Source: Piromyces finnis finn (Eukaryota > Fungi > Neocallimastigomycota). From it: 38,069 nucleotides of DNA. The first letter of the stretch is position 1, and every line of letters starts with the position of its first letter. Below, piece by piece: positions 1 through 21,884 of this stretch. The stretch covers positions 1-38,069 of the forward strand of contig MCFH01000119.1 of NCBI GenBank assembly GCA_002104945.1, written 5' to 3'. A program made the position numbers and the translations under genes. The notes below the pieces were generated by a model, which did not search any database, was not told the DNA's origin, and saw only the letters and a program-made list of their open reading frames with translations.

Positions 1-40
1 GAATGAAATTTGCTATAGAGTTACTATTATTAGTAATAAA

Positions 41-355
41 TTAATTAAGATTGAGCCAAAATCTTTTATTATTATTATTGAAAGGAATGAGAGATTTATA
101 AACTAAATCCGTTATTAAGTATTTTTCACCATTTTCTATAGGATAGTTTATATAAAACAGATAGATATTTATATTATTAAAGAAGAAGGATTGTTCTTTA
201 ATTATTTTTTTCAATTTTTTATTTTTTCGGAAAACGAATAATAATATGATAATAACAATTTCAGATATGCTCATTGCTATTGATAACTTATTTAATCTAT
301 TAAAAACCTGTCTAGTAGTATTATTATAATTATCAGAAAAACTATAATCCAAGAT
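41..355 (-). pseudogene. Isolated terminal exon (stalk, TM, tail) of an LRR receptor-like family member
   Basis: Translation FSDNYNNTTRQV...IVIIILLFVFRKNKKLKK matches the terminal exons of the paralogs at 21410 (FHDNYNDKNKQV...LIFLVLRKNRDLKK) and 19049. An AG acceptor lies at 357-356. No upstream LRR exons are visible on this strand and no LPSY motif is retained in frame. Confidence 0.6.
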
Positions 356-471
356 CTATTCTATTAAGTATATTTATATTCGAAATTATAAAGTTTAATT
401 AGTGATACATTTAATAATTGCATTAATTGCGATAATATAAATGACAAGAATTTACAAAATGGAAAATAAAT

Positions 472-1335
472 AAAAATATAGCGAAAATGGACTTAGTGGT
501 TTAATCCCAAAAGAGATTACGGAACTAATAAATAATATAATAATAAATAATATAATAATAATAATAATAATAATAATAGTAATAGTATAATGAATAAAAT
601 TAATATAATAATAATAATAATAATAATAATAGTATAGTAATAATTAGAATATAATATATAATAATAATAATAAAAAATTATATAATAGTAATAATTAGAA
701 TAATAATAATAAATATATAATAATAATAATTAATAATAGAGTAATAATAATAACTAATAATAATAATAATATTAATTTAAATTATATATATAATTTGTTT
801 TTTTTCTCTACCTATAATAGAATAATGATTTTTATTTTAAATTTTTTTTTAATATTATTTTTATACAATATAACTGGTATGATAATTATAATACCAAACC
901 AATTTTAATCAAGGATATAAATCTAAAAAAGGATGATTCCACATATCAGAATAAGGACTATTCTGAAAACCAGAATGATGAGATTCAGATAATAAACCAT
1001 TATTAACTACAGTAATTATACCATGAATAAGTATTATTGCTGTATTTGTATATTCCTAGTTTCTAAAATAAATAAAAAAAATGGTTTAAAGAACAACAAT
1101 GATTCTGTCACTGTAAATATAGAGAATTAAATTTCTACACGTGATTCTTCAAGTAATACAAAAAACATCATCTAATATAATAATTATACTGCACTTCTTG
1201 CTTCAGTTAATAATGCAATAGAGAATAATTGTATTCATTCAAAATTTGTTACTTCAATTAATAATAGAAATATTAGTTCTCAAAATAATGAATCAGTAAA
1301 TAATAATAACAATGGTAAGAGATTATCAAATTATT
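472..1335 (+). pseudogene. LRR receptor-like pseudogene: last-LRR (cap) exon plus terminal exon
   Basis: 480-525 reads SENGLSGLIPKEITEL, compared with SENGFSGSIPDEIFEL at 5581. About 870-1335 reads YDNYNTKPILIKD and is clearly similar at DNA level to 5757-6264. It contains stops (e.g. TGA in the TM region) and frameshifts. Confidence 0.75.
527..775. repeat. Imperfect (AAT)n microsatellite
   Basis: Long run of TAA/AAT units with interruptions, inside the intron of the pseudogene. Confidence 0.9.
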
Positions 1336-1534
1336 AAATATATTTCTAAAAATTAATAATAATAATATTTATTTGAATATTATTGTTTTGTACATTGCAT
1401 TTCTTTGTTCATACTAGACATTTTATATTTATTTAAAAATGAATTAAATCTTTTCTTCTTTTTTTTGTTATATAAAAATTATATTTATAACTTGTTTCTT
1501 CATTAAGTAAATGTCCATATTTAAAATCATTCAT

Positions 1535-1576
1535 ATAATAATAATTAATAAAGTAATAATAATTAATAATAATAAT

Positions 1577-1647
<71 letters not shown>

Positions 1648-1656
1648 TAATAATAA
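1535..1656. repeat. Imperfect (AAT)n microsatellite
   Basis: Long TAA/AAT run ending at the acceptor of the LRR exon at 1659. Confidence 0.9.
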
Positions 1657-1658
1657 AG

Positions 1659-2587
1659 AAATCTAGGTAATAATATTTTAAATGGATATTCCATCAGAAT
1701 TTGGAAAACTATCAAACTTACAAACATTGTAAATTGTTTTATATAATTTATTTAAAAAATTCATATTTTTATATATAATTAATTAATAAAAAACATATCT
1801 TTTTTAAAATAATGCATAACCTCTTTCTTCATTAATATAATATATAAAAGAAAACTCAAAACAATACTTTAATGGTCTAATTCCATCTGATCTTGGAAAA
1901 TTACCAAACTTAAAAGAATTGTAATCTTTTTATATTTATCATAAAGATAGTAAAATGTAATACTTAATAATGTTTGATTTTTATTTAATAATTTAAACTA
2001 AAGAGATATAAGTAAAATGGGTTAGTTGTCTATCCAGAGAAATTAAGATGAAATGAATTATGATTTGTAATATCTTAAACTTTTTTTTTTTTATATGATT
2101 TTATAGTTTTACAATTATCATTGAATAAAGAAGTTTTATATTAAAAAAGTTTTATATATTTAATAAATTATTTTATTGTAGATACAAAAAATTATAATGA
2201 TATTAATAAAGTTAAACCAGTAGTGAATGATACAAATTAAACGAGCTAATTTAAATTATAAACCATCATCATTTAATAAATAATAGTAATTGAAATGATA
2301 ATGATAATTACTATTATAATAGCCATATTTTAGTCTTAACTTTACAAAAAAGAAAAGAATAATGATAAAAATTTAACAAATTCTATTATTCACGAATTTC
2401 AATGATTCATCAGAGAACATAATAGTTAATACAAATGATAATAATGACAATGACTCAATTATTATTATCATCGCGAAATAATTTTAATAGTTTATTGAAT
2501 GATTCCGATAGTAATCCTAATATTCACTTGTTGCAACGGACCAACCTCCCAAAATATGAAGATATAATAGAAGAAAATATGAAATAA
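1659..2587 (+). pseudogene. LRR receptor-like pseudogene: 2 LRR exons, cap exon and terminal exon
   Basis: AG/GT-bounded exons at 1659-1728 (NLGNNILNGY-PSEFGKLSNLQTL, 70 nt), 1851-1920 (GLIPSDLGKLPNLKEL, 70 nt) and 2004-2066 (degenerate cap). The terminal exon from 2182 ends in LPKYEDIIEENMK*. Several indels and stops; no first exon found. Confidence 0.75.
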
Positions 2588-3269
2588 ATCAAAGTAGTAT
2601 AAATGCAAATAATGAATTTTCGAAATTTAAAGGTGGAAATGGATGATGTAGGAAGAAGTTGGGTTATATCAATTCCATATAAAAAAAAACCTCTTTTAGA
2701 ATTATTTTAACTATCCATTATTGAATAAAGTAAAAATATATTAAATAAAGTTTATTTAAAAATAAATAAATGAAGCAATTAAAATTTAAATTTTAATAAA
2801 TTAATAATTAAGTAAATTCGTGTAACAAGAGTTCCATTTTAGTGTAAATCCTTAAATTAAAATCCAATAAAATTTCATATAAAAATCACAAATGAAAGTT
2901 ACACAATATTCTAATATTATATATATTAATAAATTAATAAAGTTTATAATTTTATATTAATTATTCTTTTTTTTTTTTTTAAACAAAAAATGTAAAAAAA
3001 AATGAATTATTCTCAAATTGTATAATGACTTTAATAATAATGATAGTAAATAAGTTAATAAACTATACCTCTCTAACTAGTTTACATTGGCAATTTAATG
3101 AATGAAAATGATATTTCTTAGGTATATTCTCAGCATTCAATATTAATTTACATTACATTACATTTAAGCGAAATTATAGGAAAAATTCATCTATAGTTCA
3201 TCTATTAATAGTATTGTTTATGTTTTATATTGTCATGGCATGGATCATTGAGGTAGTTAGGAGTATCTT

Positions 3270-3307
3270 TTGAAGTTGGCTCAGTCAGCAGCGCGTAAGT
3301 CTCGTAA
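3270..3307 (+). pseudogene. tRNA-like 5' half (elongator tRNA-Met-like fragment)
   Basis: TGGCTCAGTCAGCAGCGCGTAAGTCTCGTAA resembles a tRNA A-box/D-arm followed by an anticodon-loop pattern CT-NNN-AA. No T-arm or 3' acceptor strand follows. Confidence 0.3.
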
Positions 3308-3522
3308 TTAAAATAAATAGAAATAAAAAAAATCTTATATAAAAATAAAATCATTACTTTTTACTCCCCTCCATAAAAAAATAATTATCCTTTACAATTA
3401 ATATCCGTTTTTAATTCATAAATTATTATTTCTATTATATTTTTAATTTCAAATGTAGCTTTTTTAAATCAAAAAATTCGTGTAACATTTAATTTGTGTA
3501 ACAATAATGATTTTCTAATTAG

Positions 3523-3532
3523 CCAATAAAAT
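3523..3532 (+). promoter_or_regulatory. Extended CCAAT box (CCAATAAAAT) upstream of gene A
   Basis: About 205 nt before the ATG at 3738. The same 10-mer recurs upstream of the other genes in this window. Confidence 0.4.
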
Positions 3533-3737
3533 TAAAGCAATATTTTATGAATTACATTTCTATTATTGTTTTTCCAAATTAATATTAAATAAGATTTGAT
3601 TATCATTATTATTATAGTTGACTTTTTTTACCTTTTTTTTTTGCCGTTTTTAAAAATAATAGTTCTTTTATTTTAATTTAATAATGCAAAATGTGAATGA
3701 AAAAAAAAAAAAAAAAAAAAGATAGATATAGGAAAAA

Positions 3738-6264
3738 ATGGTTAAATACGCTTTATTATTGTTAAGTTTAACCTCTACAATAAAAGTAATCTATTCAGCA
3801 TTTATTGAAGATTGCATTCCAATAAATAAATATTAGGAGAACCTTCTGATATATGATTTGTTCCCATAAAGGAATTAATTGTATCAATAGTTTTATAACA
3901 GAATGTAATAAAAAGTTTTTTTTTTCAATCAGTGAAAAAAGAAAAAAAATATTAACATATTAACATAGATTAAAACAAACTTATTTAACAATTTTTATTA
4001 TAAATAGAAAATTAGAAAATGAATATTTAAAATGTCCTATTCCTTCAGAAAATTGGTAGTTTAAAAAACTTGGAAAAACTGTAATTTTTATTTCAATCTT
4101 CTTAATAAAGAACCTAAAATATATTATATTTTTAATTGATATTTACTTATTATTATTATTATTTATAAATAGAGTTTTATCTCATAACTATTTATATGAT
4201 AATATTCCTTCAGAACTTGGGAATTTATCAAATTTAAAAATATTGTAATTGGTTATTTTTATTTTATTATTATTATTTTTAAGTATAATAATTAAAAATA
4301 TATAAATTAATTTTTTTAATTGATAATTTTTATATTATAAAATAGAAATTTAAACTGTAATGATTTAATAGGTACTATCCTTCTGAACTTGGAAATTTAA
4401 AAAAATTTGGAAGAAATGTAATTATTATTTTTTTTCTTTATCTATATAAATAGTAGTAATATTGAATAATATAACATAAATATTAATATATAGTCATTAT
4501 AAATAGCGATTTATCGATTAATCAATTAAGAAGTTCAATTCCTCGTGAAATTGGAAATTTACCAAACTTGAAAAAATTGTAAATATTTTTTTTCTTTTAT
4601 AATAAGTAAAAAAAAAAAAAATAGATTTATAGAATTATTATTTTTTTAATATTAATATATTTATATTTTACATAGGATATTATATTCAAATGATATAATA
4701 AATATGATTCCTTCAGAACTTGGTAAATTAGAAAAATTGAATATGCTGTAACTATTTTTCTTTTCTTTTCTTTATAATAAATAGTAAATTTTCATATATA
4801 ATAATTTATAATTTTTATTTCATATTATTATGTATTATAAATAGAGTAATCATAATAATGCATTAAGTGGTTCTATTCCTCCAGAACTTGGCAATTTAAA
4901 AAACTTATATTATTGTAAATAATATTTTTCAATATTATAAATTTAATATTCTATTTATTATTACAATTTTATTTATTTTTTTTTTTTTTATTATTTTCTA
5001 ATATAAATAGAAGTCTTAATAATAATATGTTATATGATGCTATTCCTCCTGAGCTTAGTAATTTGGAAAACCTGGAATATATGTAATTGCTGGTTTTTTT
5101 CTTATATGCATTAAAAGAAATTTATTAATTTTTATTTCAACCTCATATTTTTTAAAATTTTATTTATTCATGATTAATATAATAAAATTCATTTAAAAAA
5201 TAAAAGGTATTTCGGAAATAATACTTTAAATGGTTCTATTCCCCCTTCTTTTGGAAATTTATCAAAATTAAAAATTCTGTAATATAATTTATTTAATAAT
5301 TATTATAAAAATAAAAAGTTATTATATTTATAAATAGGAATTAAAAGTTAACAATTACCCATTTTCTTATATAAATGTTATTTTTAATAATCCTTATTAA
5401 AAAAAAAATAATAAAGAAATCTCCAAAATAATACTTTAAGTGGTCCTATTCCACCAGAACTTGGAAGATTATCAAACTTGAAGGAATTGTAAATTTATAT
5501 TTTATAAAAATTATTAATTAAATAACAATAATAAAATCTCATATAATTTTTTTTTTTTTATAAATTTATAAAAAAAATAGAGATATTAGCGAAAATGGAT
5601 TTAGTGGTTCTATTCCAGATGAAATATTTGAATTACAAACGTGTAAAATGTAAATACTATTTCTTTTAATTGTATTGTATTATAAATAATTCATAAATAT
5701 ATATTATTTTAATTAATTACATTTTTGTATAATAAAAAATAAAAAATATAATATAGATATAGAAAAAATTTTAATACCAAACCAATTTCAATCAAGGATA
5801 TTCCTCAAAATAAGGATGTTTCAGATAATAAAAATAAAAATAATAAATCAATAATAACTACGGTAACCATGTCAGGAATGAGTATTGTTGCTTTATCAGC
5901 TTTATTTCTGGTTATAAAGAAAAATAAAAAAAATAATATAAAAAAAAAGAATAATTCTACAAACAATGTGAATAATATATATAATATAAATGATTGTTTT
6001 CCTTCCTCTACTGATTCTTCAAACGATATCAAAAGAATATCTAATCATTCTAATACTGTTTATAATGCTCATCTTGCACCAGTTGATGATACAATTAATA
6101 ATAATAGAAATCATTCAAAATCTGTTAATTCAATTAATAATAGAAACAATAATTCACAAAATAATGAAACAAGAAATAACAATATTTTCAATTATAACAT
6201 TTCTATCAATGAAGAAGACTTACTTCCAAGTTATAAAGAAGTAGTAAATGAAAAAAATACATAA
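3738..6264 (+). pseudogene. LRR receptor-like gene A (12 exons, 9 LRR exons plus cap); frameshifted as assembled
   Basis: Exon 1 at 3738-3904 (signal peptide MVKYALLLLSLTSTIKVIYSA plus Cys cap). LRR exons: 4008-4080, 4173-4244, 4346-4417, 4507-4578, 4676-4747, 4845-4914, 5011-5082, 5207-5278, 5417-5488 (e.g. NLQNNTLSGPIPPELGRLSNLKEL). Cap exon 5581-5649. Terminal exon 5757-6264 with TM and EDLLPSYKEVVNE. All splice sites are AG/GT. About 8 single-nt indels lie in exons 1, 2, 4 and 7. Confidence 0.85.
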
Positions 6265-7087
6265 TAACACAATTACAATGTATAAATATTAATTATAATA
6301 ATATAAATGAAAAAGACAACCAAGTTATTAATATTAATGTATAATAACATTGTAATATATATTTAAAAGAATTATAATTCTCTTTTATATATTTATTTTA
6401 AATACCCAAACCTAATAATATTATGAGTTTTTTAAATCTATTTAAAACTTTAAAAAAAAAAAAAAAAGTATTAATTTTTGATTATTTTTTATTTTATTAA
6501 AGAATAAATAATAATACTTTTTAAATTTAACTATCAATTAGAATAAAACTACAAAAAAATAGAAATAAAGTAATTAAATAATATAAATAACAAATGTTAT
6601 TAGATATTTTATATTTAAATATAGTTATCTAATATTTATTTAAATATTAGTTTTTTTTCTTTCAAATTTAAATAAATTTAATATTATATTATCACTTTAA
6701 TTTTTCAGTTAAAATGTTTTCAATATTCGTATCGAGTAATAATTAATTTTTGATTTTTATTAACAAAATAAAAAAAAAAGAAATAAGAATAATAATAATA
6801 TTAAATACATAAATATTATAAATATATAATATTTAGTATGTATAGGTATAATGAATATTTTGTAATCTCAAATCCAGATTTTAATCGAGTATTAAAATAT
6901 AATTGACTTAATATTTTTATTATATAATTTTATTTTTTTTTTTTAATTTTTTTATCCTTTATTCCTCAAGATATAGATAATATATTAAACATGATAAAAT
7001 TATAATTATTTGTTTTTACTTTATTTAAAAGAATAATATTATTAAAATGTATATATTGATTTATAATTTATCGCTTTCTATTATAAA

Positions 7088-7150
7088 CTGAATGTTATGA
7101 ATAATTTAAATAGAATTATCCCTTAAGAGCTTGGAAATTTAAAAAAAATA
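7088..7150 (+). pseudogene. Orphan decayed LRR exon
   Basis: Reads NNLNRIIP*ELGNLKK, matching the family consensus NxLxGxIPxELGNL with an in-frame TAA. Confidence 0.55.
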
Positions 7151-9034
7151 ATTATATAAATCCACAAATAACAATTTTATTATAAATACGTTACATTACA
7201 CGATGTTAAGAAAAATCATCTTATTAAATAATATTAATAATAATTAGTTTAGCTTTAGTAAAGGGGACTTTTCAAATTGAAAGAGTGAAGCGTATAAAAA
7301 TAAAAAAAAAATTTTAAATTGAAAGTTTAATTTTTTTTTTGTATTTTTTATTAAATTTTATTTTCAGTTGTGTAACATAAAAATTAACTAATGTATACAT
7401 TGATGTATTACATTAAAATAAGATAAAATAGCGCTTTCTTTTTTTTTTTTACATTTTATATATAAATATTCATATTTTTTATTGTTAATATTAGTACATA
7501 GATCTATAAGATCATATATAATTACTTTTTAATAGATTTAAGAGTCGAGTCATATTGACTCTTCATTGAATTTCATTAATTCTTGGTTAATTTTCTTTTG
7601 GTACTAGTAGTGATTTGTCCTTTTCTGTTTAATACATCGTCATAACTTTAAAGTATGAAATTTTCACTAACAACTAAATTGTTGTTATGTACATTATCTA
7701 ATTATTTAGTACTATAACATGTCACTTTACTCTTTATTATAATTAATTATATCTATATAATTATAAAAATCTGCATTATTTCTCTTTTTTATATTATAAT
7801 TTATAATTTCATATTTTAATTTCATTAAATATAAATAATTACCAAAATAATAATTTATTTAAATATTCTATTCAATTTCTTTAACTTTAAAATAAATTAG
7901 AAATTATTATATAAATAAGTATAAAATGGATTAATTAAACTAGAATAAATTATTAACATTATTATTTATGTTTTCTCACATTTCTTTTCCCATTTCTTTT
8001 TTCCCATATTTTTTTTTTAGAAATAATGATAATTTAAACTTTTTTTTATTGAAATTAACCTTTTTTTTTTTTTTACCCAAAAAAATCCTTTAAATAAAAA
8101 TTGATTTTTTTTGTTTGTTTGTTTTGTTTCTCATAAAACTTACTATAAATAATTAATTTTATTGGTTATTAATCATCTAAAATTTAAAATGAATTTATTC
8201 ATAAACTTTTTAATCTTTTTATACTATTATTTACATTATTTTGTAAATAATAGTAAAAAGAGTTGTATAATAATTGGAATAATTTAATTATTATCTCAAT
8301 TTTTAAGGCATTTAATACATTTTATTTATAGGATTATTGAATTTTATAATAATTCATTATAAAAACTTAAATATACTTTATTAAAGAATTTTATTTTTTT
8401 TTTTATTTATTTTATTAATGATTTAACTTTTTGTAAGTAGAAAAAATATATATTATTATATTATTATTATATTATTACAAATAATAAATAATTATAACTA
8501 AAAATTAATTGAAATTTAAAAATAAAATAGATCAAAGGAATTTATTGAAATAAAAATTATAAAGTTAGATCTATACTTTTATTATTATTTAAAAATGAAT
8601 AAAACAGTAATCTAGTTCATTTACATGAATTACTTTATTTTATATCAATATTTAGAAATAATGAAATGAATAATTAAAATATATATATATATTTAAATAA
8701 AAAAAATTTATAATAATTATAACTTATAATTGTACTTCTTAATATGTATTTTTGATAATAATTATATAAAAAAAATTACAAAATTAACATTTATAAGGTT
8801 TACTTTTTGATTTAAATCTCCAATATTAAAATTCGTTTTTAATTCATTTAAAATTAAACTTTAATAAAATAAAAATTTGATCTATTTTTATTTGTAATAT
8901 GAAAATCCTTTTTTTCCTTTTCAATATAAATAGGTTGAAAATGTATTAAAAAAAAAAAAAAACTATTATTTATTATACCTTTAAAAAATATTATTTATTT
9001 TAAATATTAATTTAGAATTTTACTTTAATTAAAA

Positions 9035-12000: not shown

Positions 12001-12487
12001 TAACTATAATGTTGATGGTGAAGTAAGTTATTATATATAAACATTAAAGCTATTATATTAAACTATTATTATACTATATATTATAAATATTGAAAAAAAT
12101 TTATTTTAATCATCATATATTTTATTTTTTATTATTTCATAGTTTACTCTTAATGAAAACATTTCTGATAATGGTGGTGTTGATCGTGCCTATGAAGCTT
12201 GGAAAATATCCATGAATAACGATGAAAAAGAAGCTAAAGAACGTAATAAGATACTTCCAGATTTCACTAAATATACTAGAGATCAATTATTCTTTATTTC
12301 ATTTGGTCAAATTTGGTGTTCTAAAATGAGACCAGAAGTTGCTGTTCAAAGATTATCTCAAGATAATCATGCTCCAAGTGAATGGCGTGTTAAGGGTGTC
12401 TTAAGAAATTCAAAATATTTCGCTAAAGCTTTCAATTGTCCAGTCAATTCACCAATGAATCCAGAACAAAAATGTTCAATTTGGTAA
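9035..12487 (+). CDS. Secreted M13-family (neprilysin/ECE-like) zinc metallopeptidase, 11 exons, 771 aa
   Basis: Exons: 9035-9274, 9377-9487, 9591-9659, 9763-10271, 10401-10637, 10759-10838, 10980-11392, 11511-11708, 11821-11876, 11965-12022, 12143-12487. These total 2316 nt and stay open when spliced. Motifs: signal peptide, [24 protein letters not shown] (HExxH at 11640-11654), [18 protein letters not shown] and C-terminal CSIW. Confidence 0.93.
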
Positions 12488-14099
12488 AATTAATTATTAA
12501 AAATGGAAAAGAGTTGTATTTATATATTTTCTAATAAATGTATATCTAAATATGTAAAAAATAGAATAATATAAGAGAATTATTAACTATTATATTATTT
12601 TAATAATAATAAAAATTAGAAGAAATAAATAAAATTCACATAATAAATAAAAAAATTAAATATAAGAATTTTTTTTTATATTTTTTTATAAAATTTTTTA
12701 TTTTTAAAAAGTAAAAAAGATTTTTTTCCTTTTTTTATTAAATTTTTTTAGACAATTTTTCGTTCAATTTATTGTTGTGAAACATTTTTTAGACTAGTAG
12801 TAATACACTTTTTATATTTATTTGATTTAAAATTTATAGATGATAATTAATATTAATATTATTAATAATATTAATATAATAAATAATAAATATTAAAGTG
12901 ATATAAAGAATTAGATGAATTCTGCAATTTGTACATGTGAAATTGACCTACCTAATAAATTAAATGAAATAAAAAAGAAAACTAACATCAGGTAGGATAG
13001 TGTGGTGTACACTAAATTCTCCTATGAGTTTATAATTTTAATTAAATTAGTAATAAAGTTTAAAAATATTTGATGTCATTAAAAAAAAAAAAGAGTTTAT
13101 AATAATGGTTTTATTCGAAATTAGAAATGTTCTTTTATCATATCCATTCGATGTCTTATTACACCGAATAAATAATCCTTTTATTCTATTTATATTTAAT
13201 AACATAATTTTAAAATATTCTGTATTAAAATTGATCTATATAAAAGTTTATTAGAATGCTTTTATATTTATTATTAAAATAAAGCAAAGGATTTTTAAAG
13301 TGTATATTGAAAATATTTTTATTTTTTATAACTATTTTTAAATATTTAGAAAAATAAAATATGTATTTTATTCATATTTTTGTTATTGTAGTAAAAAATA
13401 TGAAAATTATATACTTTAAAGCCATTTCTTTTTTTTTTTTTACTATTATCTCTAACCTTTTTATTATTAAATACATTTTTTTATTTGATGTATCTCCAAT
13501 ACTTTATCATATTTACTTAAAAATAAAAAAAAGACACCAAATAAAATATTTTTTGGAGAAAATAAAGAACAATCTTTTTAAATGGGAACAAAACTTTTAA
13601 CAACCAAAATATCCATGTTTTATTAATATAATAAATTCTTTATATTATAACAAAATACTGTTAAAATATGTAAAATATATAAAATATGAAGGTATAAAAT
13701 GTATTAAAATATTTTGTAGTAAGTTAAAGATGCAACCATCCACAATGTAAACAAGTAAACAAGTAAATAAAAATATTTTAATTTTAGGAAAATTTCATTT
13801 CTACAAAAATGTATGAATAAAAATGTACAATTATAATTAATAATGTACATTCTCATAATTTCAATAAAAATTGTTTTGTTGAGAAGTTGAGAAAAAAGAA
13901 TAAAATTTATTAAACTTTATATTTTTACATCAAAATATATATATATAATAATGATAAGAACCATACAAAATGTTTTTTAACTATTTTGTGTCATAATCTA
14001 GTTTTGCAAAACACACTTTAAAAATATAAATTAATAAAAATAATCTTTAAATCATAGAAATAGAACTTGAAAACTATTTTTAGAAATAATAAAAAAAAA

Positions 14100-16227
14100 A
14101 ATTCATATATTATTATTGTTGGTTTATTCATATTTTCGTTTGGTAATATTATTAAATCTGCATATCATTTACCTGAATCAACTTCTGTTAAAGTTGTACA
14201 TGAATAATAAATCAATGTATCAAAATATATATTTTGAACAATAAGTTTAAATATTGCTTCTTTATAATAATTTATATTTGAAGTTTTATTATGAAAATAT
14301 TCAATTATAATAGCTACTTCACGTTATTCTTTTCCATTCCATGTATCATTTAATTGTTTTTTAGATAATTCTACTTTTTCAAATAATTTTTTCCATTTAT
14401 TATTTTCTGTGGATACCTTAAATGATGTATGTACTTCTTCATTAGGAATAAATAATTCCCAATTAATTTATCAGATTTATTATCATAATCTTTTTTATAT
14501 TCATAGGCTAAATATCCAAGATGAACAAGCTTTACTAAAACATCGTATTTATTATTATATTCTCCGCAATTTCTATTGAAATTAACAATATCCATGTCTA
14601 ATTTTATTCTATTCTTTTTATCACTCATTAAATATACAATATCTTTTTTTAGTCCATCAAAATCCATATCGATATATTTATAAAGGTTATCATACGATTC
14701 AGTTAAATGCCAATAGTTTCTAATACTATTGAATTCAAATGCTTTTATAATTGACAATGATGTATATATTTCATATGTTTTCCAATAATTCCTATTTTCA
14801 TTTTTACTTCCATCTGTTAATCTGTAACCATTATATATTTCTTTAATATTATAATAAAAAATATTTACATATTCATCATCGAAATTTTTCTTTTTTTTAA
14901 ATTTTTTGCATAATTCTTTCACTTCTTCAACTGTAAAGCCAACATATTTTGACATCCATCCACCTTCTACCATAGAAAAGTGATCAAAAATCCCTGTGAT
15001 CTCAGAATTTAATCCATAACTCTTAAGAGGCAAAATTCCTGTCATATAAGTTAAATGTATGCTTTCTTCTCCTTTAATTAATGAAGTTAAAAATTTCAAG
15101 TACTCTATTGAATTTTTATTATTATCTCGAAATACTATATCCCATTCATCAATGACGAGAATATTATGTCTACTCGTCTTTTCTAGTATTTCGTTCAATA
15201 TTTCATTAATGCTGTTTTTATTATCACATTCAAAATCTGCTATAGAATTTTTTACTTCTTTTATAATAGATGTTTTAATATTTTCTTTTCCTTCTTTTAT
15301 ACTTGTTTGATAAAGATAATTAAACATATTTAATTTTATTACATTAAATTTTCCTAAATATTTATCTCAATTTTCTGATTTTGAAATTTTTTTATCCATA
15401 AAACTAGTTATTTTCGATTCTTTATAACTATAATAAGCTGAAAGCATATCTACTATTTTGGTTTTCCCAAATCTTCTAGGTCTTGAAATACAAATATTTT
15501 GTTTCTCTGAATTTATTATTTTATTTAGTTCAAGAATTAATTCTGTTTTATCAACATAAAATTCTCTTTGTGAAAATTTTTTAAAATCATTTTCACCAGG
15601 ATTAAATATATTGTTTGTTTCCTCTTTCATATAATTCCACCAGTCAGCTTTAGAAATCAATTTAAATAATCGATGTATTTCTTTATTTGGAATGGATATT
15701 TCATTATTATATTTATCATAATTTAAATACCCTAAATGGACAAGTTTCATTAGATTGTTTTTTCTTTTTGAAAATGAATAAATATCATTTTGATACAATA
15801 ATGAATCTACTTTTATTTTTTTATCCCTTTCTGATTCTATTAATAAAGTAATAACATCTTTTAGATTATCATAATTCTTTTGAATAAATTTAGCAAGTAA
15901 ATCATAATAATTATCATCCATTTGATACCTCTTAACAATATTATTTTTTAAGGATTCTAAAATTAAATATGGAGAATATATTTTATATATTTCATTTGAA
16001 AAACTATCTATTAATTGATAACTGCCATAAGAGTCTTTTAAATTCTCATACTTTATTCTATTTCTACCTCTATCTTTGTCATTTTCATACTTTGTTTCGT
16101 TTTTATGTATTAATGCTTTATTATTTATTATTTCATCTTCAGAGGTTTTTTGTGTGATTATTTACAAGTATATAATTCCTTTAAATATTGAAAAAGATTC
16201 ATGATTAATTAATATTTTTATTTTCAT
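14100..16227 (-). pseudogene. Intronless bacterial-type AAA-ATPase-like / PD-(D/E)XK nuclease-domain pseudogene
   Basis: Motifs NPG..F....YVDKT, ISRPRRFGKT (Walker A, about 15460-15483), LVIDEWD, MTGILP, VGFTVEEV and LVHLGYL. The shifted 3' frame reads IPNEEV...EVDSGK*YADLIILP...PTIIIYE. ORFs 15367-15921 and 14371-15327 are in one frame split by a TGA; there is a frameshift near 14460 and further stops. Confidence 0.85.
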
Positions 16228-17233
16228 AGCTTTTTTCTTTTATTTTGAAAAAAGCTATAAATAAATTGAATGATATCCATTGTATCATATTATTAATAAT
16301 ATATCTTAATAATTAAAATAAAATATTTAATATAAAAATTGATACTTTATCATTATGGTATAATTCATAATACTATGTATAATATTATAGAGAGTATAAA
16401 TTATAAATTGATGTTATAGAAATAGAAATATTACTATTATTATATTATAATAAAAAAATCTTTTAAAAGGTAATATAATGTTAGTTTTATATATAATATA
16501 TATGTATTACAATAAAGGTTTTAAAATAGTTATTGCCATTTTAAAAAATTATATAATTATATAATCCATTAAATGAATAAATATTACTATATTAATGAAA
16601 ATTAAGTTATTTATTTTGATTTTCTTTGAAATTAATAATATTTATATATATTTATGTCTTTTATAACACCATTTTCACAAGGATCCTCTCCTCGTATACC
16701 ACAATATACCTATGTCTATGAATATCCAAATTATAGAAAAATATTTATAAATTGTATCCTTATGCGTTACTGATATATCATCATTATAAATACAATGATT
16801 ATCAATACATTTATTAAATAAACAATCAGAAACATTATATTTTAAAGAAATGTTAAAAAACTAGTATCACTATTAAGACAATAAACCATCACTTTATTTT
16901 TTTTGCTTTATCATTCTATATACAATACTCTACAATATTATATTTTAAATTGTAGTTTTAGGCTTTCATTCGGAAATTCAATAAAATTACCATAGTTATC
17001 ACTATTTTGTAAAGTGATACAATTTCTATTTCTACAATAACTTTTTTCATATTTTGCTCTTACCTGAATTTTCATATTTACATAATAATTTATCAGATAT
17101 TAAATATTAATAATTATGTATATCAAAGGAATATAAATATCTGTATAATTAAATCTATCGTTATCCTTATAATATTTTGTTTTTTTAAAAGGTAAAAAAA
17201 ACGTTCAAAATGATCATATTTGAAACAAAAAAG

Positions 17234-17243
17234 ATTTTATTGG
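17234..17243 (-). promoter_or_regulatory. Extended CCAAT box (ATTTTATTGG) upstream of gene B
   Basis: About 30 nt before the ATG at 17275, within a TGAAACAAAAAA-ATTTTATTGGTTAAA block shared with gene C. Confidence 0.45.
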
Positions 17244-17274
17244 TTAAATAATAAAATTAAAAAAAAAAAAAAAA

Positions 17275-17869
17275 ATGAAAACGCTTTTTTTGTTATTGCT
17301 AATCAATTTAACTTTTACAGCAAAGTTTATTTATTCTTAATTTGTAGAAGATTGTCGTATTGTAAATAAATTATTGGGAGAATTTGAGGAAAATGATTGT
17401 TGTTCTTCCCCTGGAATTACTTGTGATAAAGGTTTCGTAGTGGCAATGTAATAATAAAGAGAAAGGCTACTTTTTTTTTTTTTTTTCATTTTATTTCTAT
17501 TCAATAACCTAGATATTCAATATTAATAATAATTAACAATTAATTAACAATAGAGAATTAAGAAATGTTAACGTCATATTGCCTGGTGGTTCAATTCCAC
17601 CTGAAATTGGAAATTTATCAAACTTGATAAAATTGTAATTATCCATTTTATAAAGGAAAATTTAAAAATTCTTTATTTATATACATCAATTTATATTTAT
17701 TTTTTTTTTCAATGTTTTACAAAATAATAAATAGAGATCTTTTCAATAAAGGTTTTTCTGGTTCCATTCCTCCAGAGCTCGGAAATTTATCCAATTTGAA
17801 AGTTTTGTAAAGATTGTTTATATTATTATATAATTTATAAAACCTATAATTTCTTATTTTTAAAATTAC

Positions 17870-17901
<32 letters not shown>

Positions 17902-19748
17902 GAATTCTCCAAAAAAATGCTTTAACTGGTCCCATTCCACCTGAACTTGGAAATTTAACAAAATTGACTTGGTTGTAAATATTTTTTAATAATATTTATT
18001 TAAATCTCTCTATAAATTTTTATTCCTCCAATGAATCATAAAATAATTACATTATTTTCTTTTTTTTTTTTTTTATTTTTCATTTCTAAAAATACATTAT
18101 TAATTAAAAAATAGAAATTTAGTGGATAATAAATTAAGTGGTTCTATTCCACCTGAACTTGGAAATTTAACAGAATTGGATTCACCGTAATGAATTTATA
18201 TATACTATCTGTTTAATCTATTTATTTATTTTTAAATTCTTAATTTATTAAAATAAAAAAAATATAAAATAATGTTATTTATTCTAATTAGAAATATAAA
18301 ACTCTTTCATTAATTAAAAAAAAAAAAAAATAGACGATTAAGTGATAATTATTTAAGTGGTTCCCTTCCACCTGAACTTGGAAAGTTATCAAGCTTGAGA
18401 ACTTTGTAAATGATTTTTATAATATTATTTGTTTATCTATTCATTATATTAATTCTTATTTTAAATGAAACAAAAAAAAAAAAAAATTATATTATTTACA
18501 TTATTTTTTATTCTTTTTTAAAATTATTATAAATATGTTATTAATAGATGGATAGAAAATAATAACTTTAGTGGTTCCATTCCACCTGAGCTTGGAAATT
18601 TATTAAAATTGAGATGGATGTAATTAATAATATTTGTTTATATATAATCATTGCTTCTTTATTAATAATTAATTAATTATTTATTTATAAAATAAAAATA
18701 ATTCATGACCACTTAAAAACAACAACAACAACAACAACAACAACTAAAATTGAATAATATCTAATAAATCATGTATGATATTCAGAAATATTAGTAATAA
18801 CGGATTTAGTAGTACTATGCCACAAGAAATATTAAATCGTCCATATGATGAATTGTAAGTAATTTCTTTTTTTTTTATATAAATAGATGTACTTTTTATA
18901 TCGTTGCTCAATATGATTATATTGAAAATAGTTTATAGTTTTAAATTATGTTGATTATCATTTTAATGATTATATATAAAATGAATACAAAAAGTTTTTT
19001 ATTTTAAAATAAATATTAATATTAATTATTTGTACTGTCTATATATAGTAAATTTTATAATTATGATGATAGTACCAAACAAGTTCCCGAAAAAGAAGAA
19101 TCAGATAAATTAATTATTGATAATGATTTAAATAAGGATACTTTAAATAAGGATACTAAATCCGATAAGGGTGGTAGTAATACATTATTAGCAATAGTTA
19201 TTGTGTTTGGAATAATTGGTATTGTTTCAAGCATTTTATTATTCCTCGTTATAAAAAAAAATAAAAAGTTAAAAGATAATGATAAAAATAATGTAAGAAA
19301 TAGTTCTTTATCGACTGTAAATAATGTTCACATTAATCCATCTATAATTTCAGGAAATGATGAAAATACAACACTTGATATTGTTTCTACCCCAGTTCTT
19401 TCTTTTAATAATAATTATAACAGTACTATTACGGAAATAAATACTAATAATGCTATTACTACTATTCATGATGATGATGATGATGATGATTCAATAGTAA
19501 TTAATTCTACTATTACTACAAATAACAGATATAGTGTTCCTTTAAATTCTACGAATAATATAAACCATGTAATGACAATGAATAGCATTGGAGAAAAGGG
19601 TTTACTTCCAAGTTATGAAGATGTTTTAAATGAAGATGGAAAGCATAACACGGAAAAATATCCACTGTCTGACGATAAATCCAAAATTCAAACTATAAAA
19701 AATGAAAAAAATAAGGAACCACTTCATTCATCAAAAAAGAAATATTAA
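17275..19748 (+). pseudogene. LRR receptor-like gene B (9 exons, 6 LRR exons plus cap); single premature stop
   Basis: Exons: 17275-17447, 17554-17634 (81 nt), 17735-17806, 17903-17974, 18115-18186, 18334-18405, 18548-18619 (72 nt each), 18786-18854 (69 nt), 19049-19748. The spliced length of 1383 nt is in frame; the only lesion is TAA at 17338-17340 (codon 22). TM LLAIVIVFGIIGIVSSILLFLVI; tail GLLPSYEDVLNE. Confidence 0.88.
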
Positions 19749-20058
19749 AAATAATTTTTAAAAATAAAAAAAATGAAAAAGTATACTTTGAAAGTATATT
19801 AAAAATAATAAAAAATTTCATAGTAAAAAAATGAAAAAAAAAAAAAAATAAAAAAATAAAAAATATTTAAATATAGTTTTAAATAAAAAAAAATAAAAAA
19901 TAGAAATTTATTTAATTTGAATTTTTTTTTTTTTTTTTTTAATTTTATTAAAATAAAAAGGCGGATTTTTTTTTTTTTTACATTTTTTTTTAAAAATAAA
20001 AAAAGTCCAAAAATCGTCCGCTTTTTTTAAAAAAGTTTGAAAATTTGAAACAAAAAAA

Positions 20059-20068
20059 ATTTTATTGG
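20059..20068 (-). promoter_or_regulatory. Extended CCAAT box (ATTTTATTGG) upstream of gene C
   Basis: About 85 nt before the ATG at 20152, in the same block as upstream of gene B. Confidence 0.45.
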
Positions 20069-20151
20069 TTAAAAAAAAAGAATTTAATTAATAAAAAATA
20101 TATAAATTTGAAAAAGTAAAAAAGTTAAAAAAAAAAATAAAAATTTGAAAA

Positions 20152-21884
20152 ATGAAAAAGTTGGTTTTGTTATTGCTGTTCAATTTAACTTTTACAATAA
20201 ACGGTGTCTTTTCAGTATTTGTAAATGATTGTAGTGCAGTAAATAAATTGTTAGGAGAATCTGATAATTATGATTGTTGCACTCATAATGGAATTACATG
20301 TGAAAACGGATTCGTAGCAGTAATGTAATGATAAAAACAAAAAGTTCACTTTTTTTTTTTTTTATTTCTACTTAATAGTATAAATAAATGAATATTTATT
20401 TTTAATAATTAATTAAACAATAGAAATTTAAGTAATGGTTTGTATGGTGGTTCAATTCCTCCTGAACTTGGAAATTTGACACGTTTAGTTTATCTGTAAT
20501 TATTCTTTTTCATTTATATAGGAAGGAAGAATTAAAAGTTATTTATATATTTATATATACACTAATCTATATATTTTATTATAATGTTTTACGATATGAT
20601 AAATAGAGATCTTAGTGATCAAGGTTATCATGGTTCCCTTCCTTCAGAGCTCGGGAATTTATCAAATTTGCAATATATGTGAAGATTGTTTATATGTTAT
20701 TTGCATAATATAAATGATAATATAAATTTTATTCTAATTTTTTTTTTTTTTTTTTTTAAAAAATTATTAAAAATATTCATTATCATTATTATATAAAATA
20801 ATAATAAAAAAAAAGATATCTTAGTAATAATGCTTTTACTGGTTCAATACCATCTGAATTTGGAAATTTATTAAAATTGGAAATTTTGTACCTATTTATT
20901 GATATAATTTAATATTATAAAAAAATAAAAATAAAAATTATTAAACTTTCCTTTAAAAATATACAATTATTTTATTAACTAAATAAATAGATCATTAAGA
21001 GATAATCTTTTAAGTGGCTTTATCCCTCCTGAACTTGGAAGGTTAAACTTAGAATATTTGTAAAGTATCTTTTACTATTTGAATATATAAATAAATATAA
21101 TTTTTTATAATTTTTTTTTTGTATTTATAATATTTATATAATTATATTTTTAAACAATTCATGATCAACTAAAACAAACAACAACTAAAACTTGATAATA
21201 TTTAACTTTTTATTATATTCAGAGATATTAGGAATAACGGATTTAGTGGTTCTATACCTCAAGAAATATTAAATAATAATATTTCTAAATTGTATTTAAT
21301 TTACTTTTTTTTTTATTTTATTTATTATATAATAGTTTATATATATTATAATTATATTAGTTGTATTAAAACATTTTTATTCAAATATTCATCATTTAAT
21401 ATAATATAGTTTTCATGATAATTATAATGATAAAAATAAACAAGTTGTAGAAAAAGAAGAAAAGAATGATTTAAATAAAGATGCTAAATCCGATAATGGT
21501 ACAAATCCATTTTTAATAATAGCCATTGTATTTGGAATAATTAGTATTATTTTGACCATCCTGATATTCCTTGTTTTAAGGAAAAATAGAGATTTAAAAA
21601 AGAAAAATAATGAAAGAAATAGCTTTTCTACTTTAAATAAGGTTCACATTAACTCAACTTCAATTTCTGGAAATGGAGAAAGTTCAACTAATCTTCCAGA
21701 TATTCCTTTAAATTCTGTAAATGAGTCAAACTATATAAAATCATTAAATCATACAAATAATAATAATACTATCATTGGAGGAGAAGAAGATTTACTTCCA
21801 AGTTATGAAGATATATTAAATGAAAATGGTGAACATAACACTGGTAATATGCATGACTCAACCTCTAACTTCATTAAAGAATAA
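20152..21884 (+). CDS. LRR receptor-like protein C (7 exons, 4 LRR exons plus cap), intact, 333 aa, type I single-pass membrane protein without kinase
   Basis: Exons: 20152-20324, 20424-20495, 20607-20678, 20816-20887, 20991-21059, 21223-21291, 21410-21884, totalling 1002 nt and open. Signal peptide MKKLVLLLLFNLTFTINGVFS; cap DCCTHNGITCENG; LRRs such as YLSNNAFTGSIPSEFGNLLKLEIL; TM; tail EDLLPSYEDILNE. Confidence 0.92.

What the first reader, a model, noticed from the sequence alone, without database searches (positions are those of the whole stretch)
41..21884. Cluster of plant-type LRR receptor-like proteins in a probable anaerobic fungus: candidate cell-surface recognition system
Seen: at least 7 loci (41, 472, 1659, 3738, about 7090, 17275, 20152) share one layout. 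It runs signal peptide, Cys cap, 24-aa LRRs with consensus xLxxNxLSGxIPxELGNLxxLxxL, charged stalk, one TM, basic stop-transfer (KKNKK) and a kinase-less tail. Established: this consensus is the 'plant-specific' LRR class of plant RLKs/RLPs (Cf-type, CLV2-type). Characterised fungal innate sensors (NLR-like) mostly use WD40/TPR/ankyrin repeats instead. Inference: this is an expanded, fast-turnover RLP-like receptor family, possibly sensing microbes or plant ligands. I know of no functional description, although the LRR domains are probably auto-annotated.
Basis: partly seen in the sequence, partly recalled or inferred. Interest (0 to 1): 0.85.

Follow-up and report, generated by a model that had tools for sequence, protein, structure and literature searches.

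The report
Gut-fungus membrane LRR receptor-like genes
The gut fungus Piromyces finnis carries a small cluster of genes for surface proteins with a plant-style leucine-rich-repeat head, one membrane span and a tail bearing a ubiquitin-ligase docking motif. Only one copy is intact and transcribed, so this is a modest, lineage-specific family and not a large recognition system.

Summary
The window is the whole contig MCFH01000119.1 of Piromyces finnis, so it is fungal and not contamination. Family sequence lies at all seven stated places, but only three loci have the full layout.

- **G3 (20152-21884)** is intact: 7 exons, 333 aa, with RNA k-mer support.
- **G2 (17275-19748)** has an in-frame TAA in its signal peptide and almost no RNA words.
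- **G1 (3738-6264)** has at least six frame breaks and has lost framework glycines.
- **The other four places** are fragments.

The repeats are the 24-residue "plant-specific" class, but that class is not confined to plants. The best database hits are bacterial, and diatoms and the fungus Catenaria also score. Catenaria LRR-membrane genes share the double-Cys cap and the same phase-2 intron in each 72-nt repeat exon, which suggests an old lineage of zoosporic fungi and not a plant transfer.

The stalk-membrane-tail module was found only in P. finnis. Its one conserved element is an L/PPxY motif overlapping a YxxPhi signal. I infer ubiquitin-dependent endocytosis; this is untested.

The published gene models are truncated and lack the signal peptide and cap. 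The scan has met related LRR clusters elsewhere in this genome (s1-171695, s1-185380).

Verdict: a new member of a known kind, of moderate interest.

The parts
20152..21884 (+). G3, the only intact copy. Seven exons: 20152-20324, 20424-20495, 20607-20678, 20816-20887, 20991-21059, 21223-21291, 21410-21884. Encodes 333 aa.
   Evidence: Spliced reading frame with GT-AG borders. RNA runs hold 0.43 and 0.18 of its sampled words; about 0.48 is expected for a fully spliced mRNA. The published models P0002 and P0003 use the same junctions but start inside introns.
20152..20324 (+). G3 exon 1: signal peptide (hydrophobic residues 3-24) and a 4-Cys cap (C27, C42, C43, C50).
   Evidence: Hydropathy and Cys list. 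The cap aligns with the Catenaria P0062 N-terminus at E 3e-5. No Pfam hit. The Cys hairpin matches LRRNT-like caps in a profile comparison, 82% probability over 18 columns.
20424..21291 (+). Five LRR exons of G3 (72, 72, 72, 69 and 69 nt). Each is flanked by phase-2 introns that split the last Leu/Ile codon of the repeat.
   Evidence: Pfam LRR_1, LRR_8 and LRR_4 hit P0003. PDB sequence search gives plant LRR-receptor-kinase ectodomains.
21410..21884 (+). G3 last exon: charged stalk, membrane span (21507-21581), basic RKNRDLKKK stretch, and an N/S-rich tail of about 100 aa with LPSY at 21795-21806.
   Evidence: Hydropathy over 19 residues peaks at 3.24. Net charge is +5 after the span and 0 before it..
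17275..19748 (+). G2, tandem duplicate of G3 with 7 LRR exons (9 exons, 460 codons). In-frame TAA at 17338-17340 inside the signal peptide. Membrane span 19185-19256. LPSY 19605-19616. Probable pseudogene.
   Evidence: The TAA exon is identical in MCFH01000067.1. Almost none of the RNA words found in 17200-21950 lie outside G3. G2 is collinear with G3, introns included, apart from two extra LRR exons.
3738..6264 (+). G1, a copy with 10 LRR exons. Frame breaks or stops occur in exon 1, LRR1 (4008-4080), LRR3 (4346-4417) and LRR6 (4845-4914). The 3' half is intact. Membrane span 5869-5916. LPSY 6223-6234. Probable pseudogene.
   Evidence: All four losses of the framework Gly of 'SGxIP' are in G1. 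Substitutions of that kind cannot be explained by insertion or deletion errors in the assembly.
14..352 (-). Relic of a last exon: stalk, membrane span, KNKKLKK, and a decayed tail with no PY motif.
   Evidence: tblastn at E 5e-6. ORF 41-352.
472..539 (+). Isolated relic of a terminal-type LRR exon (NGLSGLIPKEI...).
1659..2590 (+). Degenerate copy: two LRR pieces (1688-1729, 1856-1921), a stalk and membrane-span region with stops (2166-2372), and a tail piece with LPKY at 2546-2557.
6961..7743 (.). Scrambled relics: LRR pieces with a stop on the + strand (6961-7150) and a tail piece with a stop on the - strand (7579-7743).
17235..17248 (+). Exact 14-nt element TTTTATTGGTTAAA upstream of G2. 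The same element stands at 20060-20073 upstream of G3. It contains an inverted CCAAT.
   Evidence: two exact copies among five matches at up to one mismatch, against 0.74 expected by chance. One search shows the surrounding 31 nt are 97% identical.

Best explanation
This is a small, tandemly duplicated family of type-I membrane LRR proteins. As far as the tail can be traced, it is specific to Piromyces finnis.

G3 is the working gene. Its product has a cleavable signal peptide, a fungal-type 4-Cys cap, five 24-residue repeats of the 'plant-specific' class, a charged stalk, one membrane span and a disordered N/S-rich cytosolic tail with no enzyme domain. G2, G1 and four relics are copies in successive stages of decay, which is birth-and-death evolution.

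**Shown**
- The gene structures and the intactness of G3.
- The LRR class.
- The predicted topology.
- The restriction of the tail module to P. finnis.
- The cap and the intron position and phase shared with Catenaria anguillulae LRR-membrane genes.

**Inferred**
- The ectodomain binds an extracellular ligand on its concave face. The positions on the beta-strand face are hypervariable and rich in aromatic residues, while the GSIPPELGNL backbone is nearly invariant.
- The one conserved tail element is [L/P]P[S/K]Y followed by acidic residues, and it overlaps a YxxPhi signal. I infer that it recruits an Rsp5/Nedd4-type ubiquitin ligase through its WW domains, or the AP-2 adaptor, so that output is ubiquitin-dependent endocytosis or sorting and not kinase signalling.
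- The shared fungal gene architecture points to an old LRR receptor-like lineage of zoosporic fungi, not a recent plant or bacterial transfer.
For: - **Organism and contig:**
- **G3 model:** 333 aa, GT-AG borders, all introns phase 2.
- **Topology:** N-terminal hydrophobic segment, a single strong membrane span, +5 net charge on the inner side, Cys only in the cap.
- **LRR identity:** Pfam LRR_1 at E 2.5e-16, LRR_8 and LRR_4 above threshold for P0003. PDB hits to the GSO1, FLS2, PEPR1, MIK2 and SERK/BAK1 ectodomains.
- **Variability pattern:**
- **Transcription of G3 without its introns:** X2 holds 0.43 and X3 0.18 of the sampled words. These account for nearly all RNA words found in 17200-21950.
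- **Tail motif:** LLPSY is invariant in G1, G2 and G3. It is PPSY in the paralogue P0121 and LPKY in a relic.
- **Tail module restricted to P. finnis:**
- **Catenaria:** cap similarity at E 3e-5; 72-nt LRR exons with the phase-2 intron in the same Leu codon; a C-terminal membrane span.
Against:
- The RNA evidence is a share of k-mers in assembled contigs of runs whose RNA label is itself a guess. It cannot prove that exon 1 is part of the mRNA.
- The signal peptide and membrane span rest on hydropathy alone.
- The PY/YxxPhi reading is a motif match of 4 to 10 residues, with no binding data. I did not look for an Rsp5 gene in this genome.
- The Pfam NEDD4_Bsd2 match to P0001 is below threshold (E 0.096).
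- The contig comes from a long-read assembly with homopolymer insertion and deletion errors, so some G1 frame breaks could be errors.
- No ligand is known, and no orthologue was found in another gut fungus.
Confidence: 0.55

Rival explanations
1. The protein is an adhesin or attachment protein, not a signalling or endocytic receptor. The LRR head would stick zoospores or rhizoids to plant particles or to partner microbes, and the tail would only anchor it.
For: A short five-repeat ectodomain on a charged stalk. No enzymatic tail. Many of the closest bacterial LRR relatives are surface proteins carrying FN3, Ig or type-IX-secretion sorting domains.
Against: The only tail element kept across paralogues that are otherwise 33-56% identical is a sorting or ligase-docking motif. 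That suggests regulated trafficking and not a passive anchor. No binding data exist either way.
Confidence: 0.2
2. The protein is a kinase-less co-receptor that signals through a partner membrane kinase. This is how plant receptor-like proteins work with SOBIR1, and how the five-repeat SERK and BIR ectodomains work in receptor complexes.
For: Five LRRs, as in SERK/BAK1. Both score in the PDB search. Language-model neighbours include RLP51 and BIR2 clusters, but at scores below 0.9, which makes them leads only. LRR receptor kinases are reported to be expanded in chytrids (PMC13618815).
Against: No LRR kinase lies in the window. I did not test whether P. finnis has such kinases. No GxxxG motif is evident in the membrane spans read. 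The tail is 100-170 aa long, not short as in plant receptor-like proteins.
Confidence: 0.12
3. The genes are of foreign origin: the repeats were acquired from bacteria or plants by horizontal transfer, which is frequent in gut fungi.
For: The best non-self hits to the LRR region are bacterial and metagenomic proteins (E to 1e-44, about 50% identity over three repeats). They rank ahead of plants.
Against: Hit rank among repeat proteins mostly reflects how regular the repeats are. The genes have one intron per repeat, at the same codon and phase as in Catenaria, a member of another fungal phylum. The double-Cys cap matches Catenaria and does not match the plant or bacterial caps tested.
Confidence: 0.1
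4. The apparent pseudogenes are assembly errors, and G1 and G2 are functional genes in the living fungus.
For: The window and its twin region on MCFH01000067.1 differ almost only by single-base insertions or deletions at homopolymers (38 in 7.2 kb). That is typical of an unpolished long-read consensus.
Against: - In 17581-22050 only 6 such differences occur, all in long non-coding homopolymers.
- The G2 defect is a stop codon with no change of frame where G3 reads GTA, so it is not an insertion or deletion. It is identical in both contigs.
- G2 has almost no RNA words.
- G1 packs at least six breaks into 1.2 kb, some at runs of only 2-4 bases. It has also lost the framework Gly in 4 of 6 intact units.
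Confidence: 0.15

Closest known systems
Catenaria anguillulae (Blastocladiomycota) LRR-membrane proteins P0062, P0085 and P0123 (hypothetical proteins BCR44DRAFT_1437553, _1444112 and _1437715)
   Same: An N-terminal cap with the pattern [DE]C-x-[AI]-[VL]...CC...C-xx-G-x-V. LRRs of the same 24-residue class. One 72-nt exon per repeat, with a phase-2 intron in the same Leu codon. A single C-terminal membrane span and no kinase domain. Tandem neighbours that are also LRR genes.
   Different: Catenaria has 8-9 repeats and a Cys-rich cap after the repeats, which Piromyces lacks. The tails are unrelated: the tail profile finds no Catenaria protein. No PY motif was noted in the Catenaria tails. Their function is equally unknown.
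Plant LRR receptor-like proteins and small LRR ectodomains (CLV2, Cf-9, RLP51, TMM; SERK/BAK1; BIR)
   Same: A signal peptide, a Cys cap, the 24-residue LxxLxLxxNxLSGxIPxxLGxL repeats, one membrane span and no kinase. The repeat count of five matches SERK and BIR. The best solved-structure matches are plant LRR-receptor-kinase ectodomains.
   Different: Pfam LRRNT_2 does not recognise the cap, and the plant cap does not match by BLAST. There is no island domain and no Cys pair after the repeats. There are 5-10 repeats where classic receptor-like proteins have 20-30. The tail is long and low in complexity, with a PY motif, where the plant tail is short and basic. No SOBIR1-type partner is known.
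Bacterial surface LRR proteins with the IPPELGNL-type repeat (Bacteroidota, Anaerolineae and others)
   Same: The highest-scoring LRR similarity, about 50-57% identity over three repeats. Many also carry a CxWxGVxC cap.
   Different: These are prokaryotic genes without introns. They use other anchors (FN3, Ig, type-IX-secretion sorting domain). They have no type-I membrane span followed by a tail. Their cap is longer and has a single Cys where the fungal cap has CC.
Fungal secreted plant-like LRR proteins (ZtLRR and other sLRRs; bioRxiv 10.1101/2025.08.22.671746)
   Same: Small fungal proteins made of plant-like LRRs behind a signal peptide. They are reported across fungi, including a chytrid.
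   Different: Those proteins are soluble effectors of plant pathogens that suppress plant immunity. G3 is membrane-anchored with a cytosolic tail, and it comes from a saprotrophic gut fungus.
PY-motif membrane partners of Nedd4/Rsp5 ligases (Ndfip, Bsd2, Sna3, Ear1; Spt23 LPKY). This comparison rests on my own knowledge.
   Same: A cytosolic [L/P]PxY motif followed by acidic residues, close to a membrane span. The variants LPSY, PPSY and LPKY all occur in this family.
   Different: There is no sequence homology outside the motif. The Pfam NEDD4_Bsd2 match is below threshold. Those proteins have no LRR ectodomain. WW-domain binding is untested here.

Membership tests
'Plant-specific' (PS) LRR class | A 24-residue unit with the consensus LxxLxxLxLxxNxLxGxIPxxLxx (stated in PMC5296948). 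| tested here: met
   In 15 intact units, P12, L18 and L21 are invariant, and N5, G9, I11, E14 and G16 are near-invariant. The best solved-structure hits are plant LRR-receptor-kinase ectodomains.
'Plant-specific' (PS) LRR class | Restriction to plants, as the name implies. | tested here: not met
   The same class gives top hits in bacteria, diatoms and Catenaria.
Plant LRR receptor-like proteins (Cf-9 / CLV2 type) | An N-terminal signal peptide. | tested here: met
   Charged MKK start, hydrophobic residues 3-24, small residues before the likely cleavage site. Hydropathy only; no SignalP was available.
Plant LRR receptor-like proteins (Cf-9 / CLV2 type) | An LRRNT_2 cap (PF08263). | tested here: inconclusive
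   No Pfam hit at E up to 1 and no BLAST match to a plant cap. A profile comparison does align the CC-x-W/H-x-G-I/V-x-C hairpin with LRRNT-like caps, at 82% probability over 18 columns.
Plant LRR receptor-like proteins (Cf-9 / CLV2 type) | A large ectodomain (about 20-30 repeats), often with an island domain, and a Cys-pair cap after the repeats. | tested here: not met
   There are 5 (G3), 7 (G2) or 10 (G1) repeat exons and no island. All Cys residues lie in the N-terminal cap.
Plant LRR receptor-like proteins (Cf-9 / CLV2 type) | A single membrane span followed by a short cytosolic tail with no kinase. | tested here: inconclusive
   A single span and no kinase or other Pfam domain. However, the tail is about 100-170 aa long, not short.
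Plant LRR receptor-like proteins (Cf-9 / CLV2 type) | Signalling through a SOBIR1-type adaptor kinase. | not testable with these tools
   The tools offer no search of the whole genome, and no interaction data exist.
LRR-membrane genes of zoosporic fungi (Catenaria type) | A double-Cys N-terminal cap: [DE]C-x-[AI]-[VL]...CC...C-xx-G-x-V. | tested here: met
   BLASTP at E 3e-5. The alignment has six invariant columns, four of them Cys. Among 241 retrieved proteins only the Catenaria ones carry the motif.
LRR-membrane genes of zoosporic fungi (Catenaria type) | One 72-nt exon per repeat, with a phase-2 intron inside the last Leu codon of the unit. | tested here: met
   Piromyces splits the codon as xT|A and Catenaria as TT|G, both with GT-AG borders.
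LRR-membrane genes of zoosporic fungi (Catenaria type) | A Cys-rich cap after the repeats, and a homologous tail. | tested here: not met
   G2 and G3 have no Cys after the repeats. The tail profile finds no Catenaria protein.
PY-motif substrates or adaptors of Nedd4/Rsp5 ligases | A cytosolic [L/P]PxY motif. | tested here: met
   LPSY in G1, G2 and G3, inside the invariant LLPSY. PPSY in P0121. LPKY in a relic.
PY-motif substrates or adaptors of Nedd4/Rsp5 ligases | Binding to WW domains and ligase-dependent ubiquitination. | not testable with these tools
   This needs a biochemical test. The Pfam NEDD4_Bsd2 match to P0001 is below threshold (E 0.096 and 13.3 bits, against a cut-off of 24.7).
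Fungal secreted sLRR effectors (ZtLRR type) | A soluble secreted protein that consists of the LRR domain only. | tested here: not met
   G3 has a strong membrane span (hydropathy peak 3.24) and a 100-aa tail.

The most novel reading that the evidence does not exclude
Zoosporic fungi (Blastocladiomycota and Neocallimastigomycota) may keep an ancient lineage of LRR receptors with its own double-Cys cap and a one-repeat-per-exon build, a lineage lost in Dikarya. In Piromyces the ligand-binding head would be wired directly to the ubiquitin and endocytosis machinery through a PY motif, with no kinase. That would be a receptor output not described for LRR receptor-like proteins. The truncated published gene models would have hidden it from proteome surveys.
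Probability: 0.2. Interest if true: 0.65.

Novelty: new member of a known kind. Interest (0 to 1): 0.4.

Why it matters
Fungi are usually said to lack LRR surface receptors (Soanes and Talbot 2010, PMC2939053), with a few exceptions in chytrids and zygomycetes.

- **A worked example in a gut fungus.** This locus shows that such proteins exist there.
- **Under-counting in proteome surveys.** The published models miss the signal peptide and cap, so surveys based on predicted proteins will under-count them.
- **The same build in two fungal phyla.** The gene architecture is shared, which bears on where 'plant-type' LRR ectodomains came from.
- **A testable output.** If the PY-motif tail is confirmed, it offers a simple kinase-free output for a surface receptor.

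The practical value is modest. There is one working gene, no known ligand, and no orthologue yet traced in other gut fungi.

Tried and rejected
1. **Read laying on 17200-21950.** After that I sent no reference containing 18497-18532 to any database or search tool. Local scripts did read the whole window file.
2. **Search with the G2 tail exon, a profile of three tails against 1.84 billion representatives, and a metagenome scan.** The only hits were P. finnis models, so no orthologue in another gut fungus was found this way.
3. **Search limited to the cap plus first repeat of Catenaria P0085.** LRR words swamped it. It added only one Catenaria paralogue and no other fungi.
4. **Pfam on the cap exons.** No hit.
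5. **A mini-intron to remove the G2 stop.** The only GT...AG pair around it is 23 nt long and shifts the frame, so I rejected it (sequence).
6. **Contamination by plant or protist DNA.** Rejected: the contig is in the P. finnis assembly. Its region 9419-24767, which includes G2 and G3, recurs at 99.4-99.96% on a 265-kb contig.
7. **ARAGORN on the retroposon-like insertion in the twin contig.** No tRNA was called.
8. **Structure prediction.** I did not run it.
9. **The claim that plant receptor genes place their introns at the same spot.** I could not verify it from the papers I read.

Full report
**What the window is.** The window has 16-30% G+C. Searching with the last exon of one gene returned proteins of Piromyces finnis. 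Exact look-ups then placed them on MCFH01000119.1, a 38,069-bp contig of GCA_002104945.1 whose stored stretch is identical to window 8775-29748. The window is therefore that whole contig.

Window 9419-24767 recurs on the 265-kb contig MCFH01000067.1 at 99.4-99.96% identity. The differences are almost all single-base insertions or deletions in homopolymers. After the point matching window position ~24,700, the large contig runs backwards to ~18,660 and then forwards again. This duplicates gene models: P0002 is encoded twice, and P0003 and P0122 come from the inverted copies.

**Checking the observation.** A six-frame motif scan and a scan for AG-(63-78 nt)-GT exons show many LRR units on the + strand. 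Each sits on its own 72-nt (sometimes 69-nt) exon, flanked by phase-2 introns that split the last Leu/Ile codon of the unit. Joining the exons gives three genes.

- **G3 (20152-21884)** has 7 exons and an open 333-codon frame.
- **G2 (17275-19748)** has 9 exons and 460 codons. Codon 22, inside the signal peptide, is TAA where G3 has GTA. No usable intron removes it (sequence). The exon is identical in the large contig.
- **G1 (3738-6264)** has 10 LRR exons. Its frame breaks in exon 1, in LRR1 (73 nt), in LRR3 (two shifts) and in LRR6 (70 nt). All four losses of the framework Gly in 'SGxIP' also lie in G1, and insertion or deletion errors cannot explain those.

The places at 41, 472, 1659 and about 7090 are relics: single exons, stop-ridden pieces, or pieces on opposite strands. 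So seven loci do carry family sequence, but only three have the full layout and only one is intact.

**Transcription.** I sent nothing from those places to any search tool afterwards.

The run index still gives indirect evidence. Two runs labelled as probable RNA, from the same organism, hold 0.16 and 0.07 of the sampled words of 17200-21950. They hold 0.43 and 0.18 of the words of G3 alone. In words, that is about 78 against 74 for the first run and about 34 against 31 for the second, so nearly all RNA words lie in G3.

A fully spliced G3 mRNA would hold about 0.48 of the words and unspliced or genomic sequence about 1.0. The last exon alone would hold about 0.26. G3 therefore appears in RNA contigs with most of its small exons and without its introns. 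G2 is essentially absent, which fits a pseudogene. This is a k-mer share in assembled contigs; no junction was seen.

**What the protein is.** Simple calculations on G3 show the following:

- an N-terminal hydrophobic segment, residues 3-24;
- four Cys residues, all in the cap (27, 42, 43, 50);
- one strong membrane span, residues ~209-233;
- net charge 0 before the span and +5 after it;
- a 101-residue tail rich in N and S.

Pfam finds only LRR families (LRR_1 at E 2.5e-16, LRR_8 and LRR_4 in P0003) and no kinase or other domain. Against solved structures, the best matches are the plant LRR-receptor-kinase ectodomains GSO1, FLS2, PEPR1 and MIK2, followed by SERK1 and BAK1. The repeats therefore belong to the 24-residue class called plant-specific (definition in PMC5296948). 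Across 15 intact units the GSIPPELGNL segment is nearly invariant. The x positions of LxxLxLxxN are highly variable and often aromatic, which is the usual sign of a binding face.

**Published models.** The deposited proteins are truncated. P0002 (253 aa) and P0003 (189 aa) start at ATGs inside G3 introns. P0001 (259 aa) and a 128-aa model split G2 into two. None contains the signal peptide or the cap. They are named 'hypothetical' or 'L domain-like protein'.

**Is it plant-type?** Searching with P0002 gave 818 hits. The best outside P. finnis are unnamed metagenomic and bacterial proteins carrying FN3, Ig or type-IX-secretion domains (E to 1e-44). Diatoms, plants and two proteins of the blastoclad fungus Catenaria anguillulae also appear. 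The repeat class is thus widespread.

The Catenaria proteins have the same overall layout of cap, repeats and a C-terminal membrane span. The G3 cap aligns with the Catenaria cap (E 3e-5, 39% identity, same Cys pattern). It does not align with a plant MIK2-like cap or a bacterial cap. Only the Cys hairpin resembles LRRNT-like caps in a profile comparison.

Mapping P0062 and P0085 onto their loci shows one 72-nt exon per repeat, with a GT-AG phase-2 intron in the same Leu codon as in Piromyces. A shared cap and a shared intron position and phase across two fungal phyla argue for common fungal ancestry and against recent transfer. The argument is not a phylogeny.

**How large is the family?** A profile of the stalk, membrane span and tail from G1-G3 was searched against 1.84 billion representatives. 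It found four proteins, all from P. finnis. Three are models from this region. The fourth, P0121 (ORX40350.1, on MCFH01000100.1), is a chimeric model whose locus holds only three LRR exons and a last exon, with no cap exon. A scan of JGI metagenome contigs found nothing. By this measure the family is small and confined to P. finnis.

Earlier notes of this scan report other LRR clusters elsewhere in the genome, including forms with chitin anchors (s1-171695, s1-185380). I did not test how they relate to this family.

**The tail.** G1, G2 and G3 are 33-56% identical over the last exon. The only long invariant stretch is LLPSY, followed by acidic residues and N-E. P0121 has PPSY and the relic at 2546-2557 has LPKY. 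From general knowledge, [L/P]PxY is the ligand of the WW domains of Nedd4/Rsp5 ligases, and LPKY is the Rsp5-binding motif of yeast Spt23. The same Tyr starts a YxxPhi sorting signal (YEDI, YEDV, YKEV). I therefore propose ubiquitin- or adaptor-dependent endocytosis as the output. This is inference from a short motif.

**Duplication history.** G2 and G3 are collinear, promoter and introns included, at about 65-70% identity. G2 has two extra LRR exons. Both genes have an exact TTTTATTGGTTAAA element upstream.

**Literature.**
- Soanes and Talbot (PMC2939053) found LRR-plus-membrane-span proteins in only 4 of 49 fungal genomes, mainly chytrids and zygomycetes.
- A 2026 paper reports expanded LRR-kinase groups in chytrids (PMC13618815).
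- A 2025 preprint describes secreted plant-like LRR effectors across fungi.
- I found no paper on LRR-membrane proteins of gut fungi.

**Verdict.** The feature is real, and the 'plant-type' label is only partly apt. It is a new member of a known kind, with a fungal cap and a PY-motif tail as its own traits. One working gene sits among decaying copies.

Noticed in passing
L004:7558-8190 (MCFH01000067.1), inserted at the point matching window 16963-16975: The twin contig has a ~630-bp insertion that the window lacks. It is bounded by the direct repeat CTTTCATTCGGAA and starts with a T-run of about 95 nt. On the opposite strand it carries a B-box-like GGTTCGACCCC. It looks like a recent SINE-type retroposon, so the two contigs may be alleles or true duplicates and not one region assembled twice. 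ARAGORN calls no tRNA in it.
   Followed up: partly
L004:15943-20973 and L002:1-1128 (MCFH01000067.1), compared with window 18658-24886: The large contig runs forward to the equivalent of window ~24,700, back to ~18,660, then forward again, at 98.7-99.4% identity. This is either an inverted triplication or a long-read palindrome artefact. It inflates the gene count: P0002 is encoded twice, and P0003 and P0122 come from the inverted copies.
   Followed up: partly
window 17581-24767 compared with L001: There are 38 differences, nearly all single-base homopolymer insertions or deletions, and 32 of them lie beyond 22997. Consensus quality is uneven, so frameshifts anywhere in this assembly deserve caution.
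   Followed up: yes
L007:6001-8035 (Catenaria anguillulae MCFL01000077.1): In P0085 seven successive LRR exons have almost identical intron ends (gtgcgttgc ... catttgccag). Exon and intron were evidently duplicated together, and recently. The P0062 locus has a second LRR gene 1 kb downstream (L006:9031-10425).
   Followed up: partly
window 17235-17248 and 20060-20073: The exact 14-nt element TTTTATTGGTTAAA, which contains an inverted CCAAT, lies 27 and 79 nt upstream of the G2 and G3 start codons. It may be a shared promoter element.
   Followed up: partly
window 9035-16202 and 26792-30143: The annotated neighbours are an M13 peptidase (+), an AAA-ATPase-like gene (-) and a Lipase_3 / phospholipase-like gene (-). 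None has an evident link to the LRR genes.
   Followed up: no
window 20991-21059: The published model P0002 uses a donor 15 nt upstream of the one used in P0003 and in my model. The protein then reads GR|DIRNN where the other models read GRLNLEYL|DIRNN. This may be alternative splicing or a model error.
   Followed up: no
The tool says its filter also trips by chance. I worked beside them.
   Followed up: no
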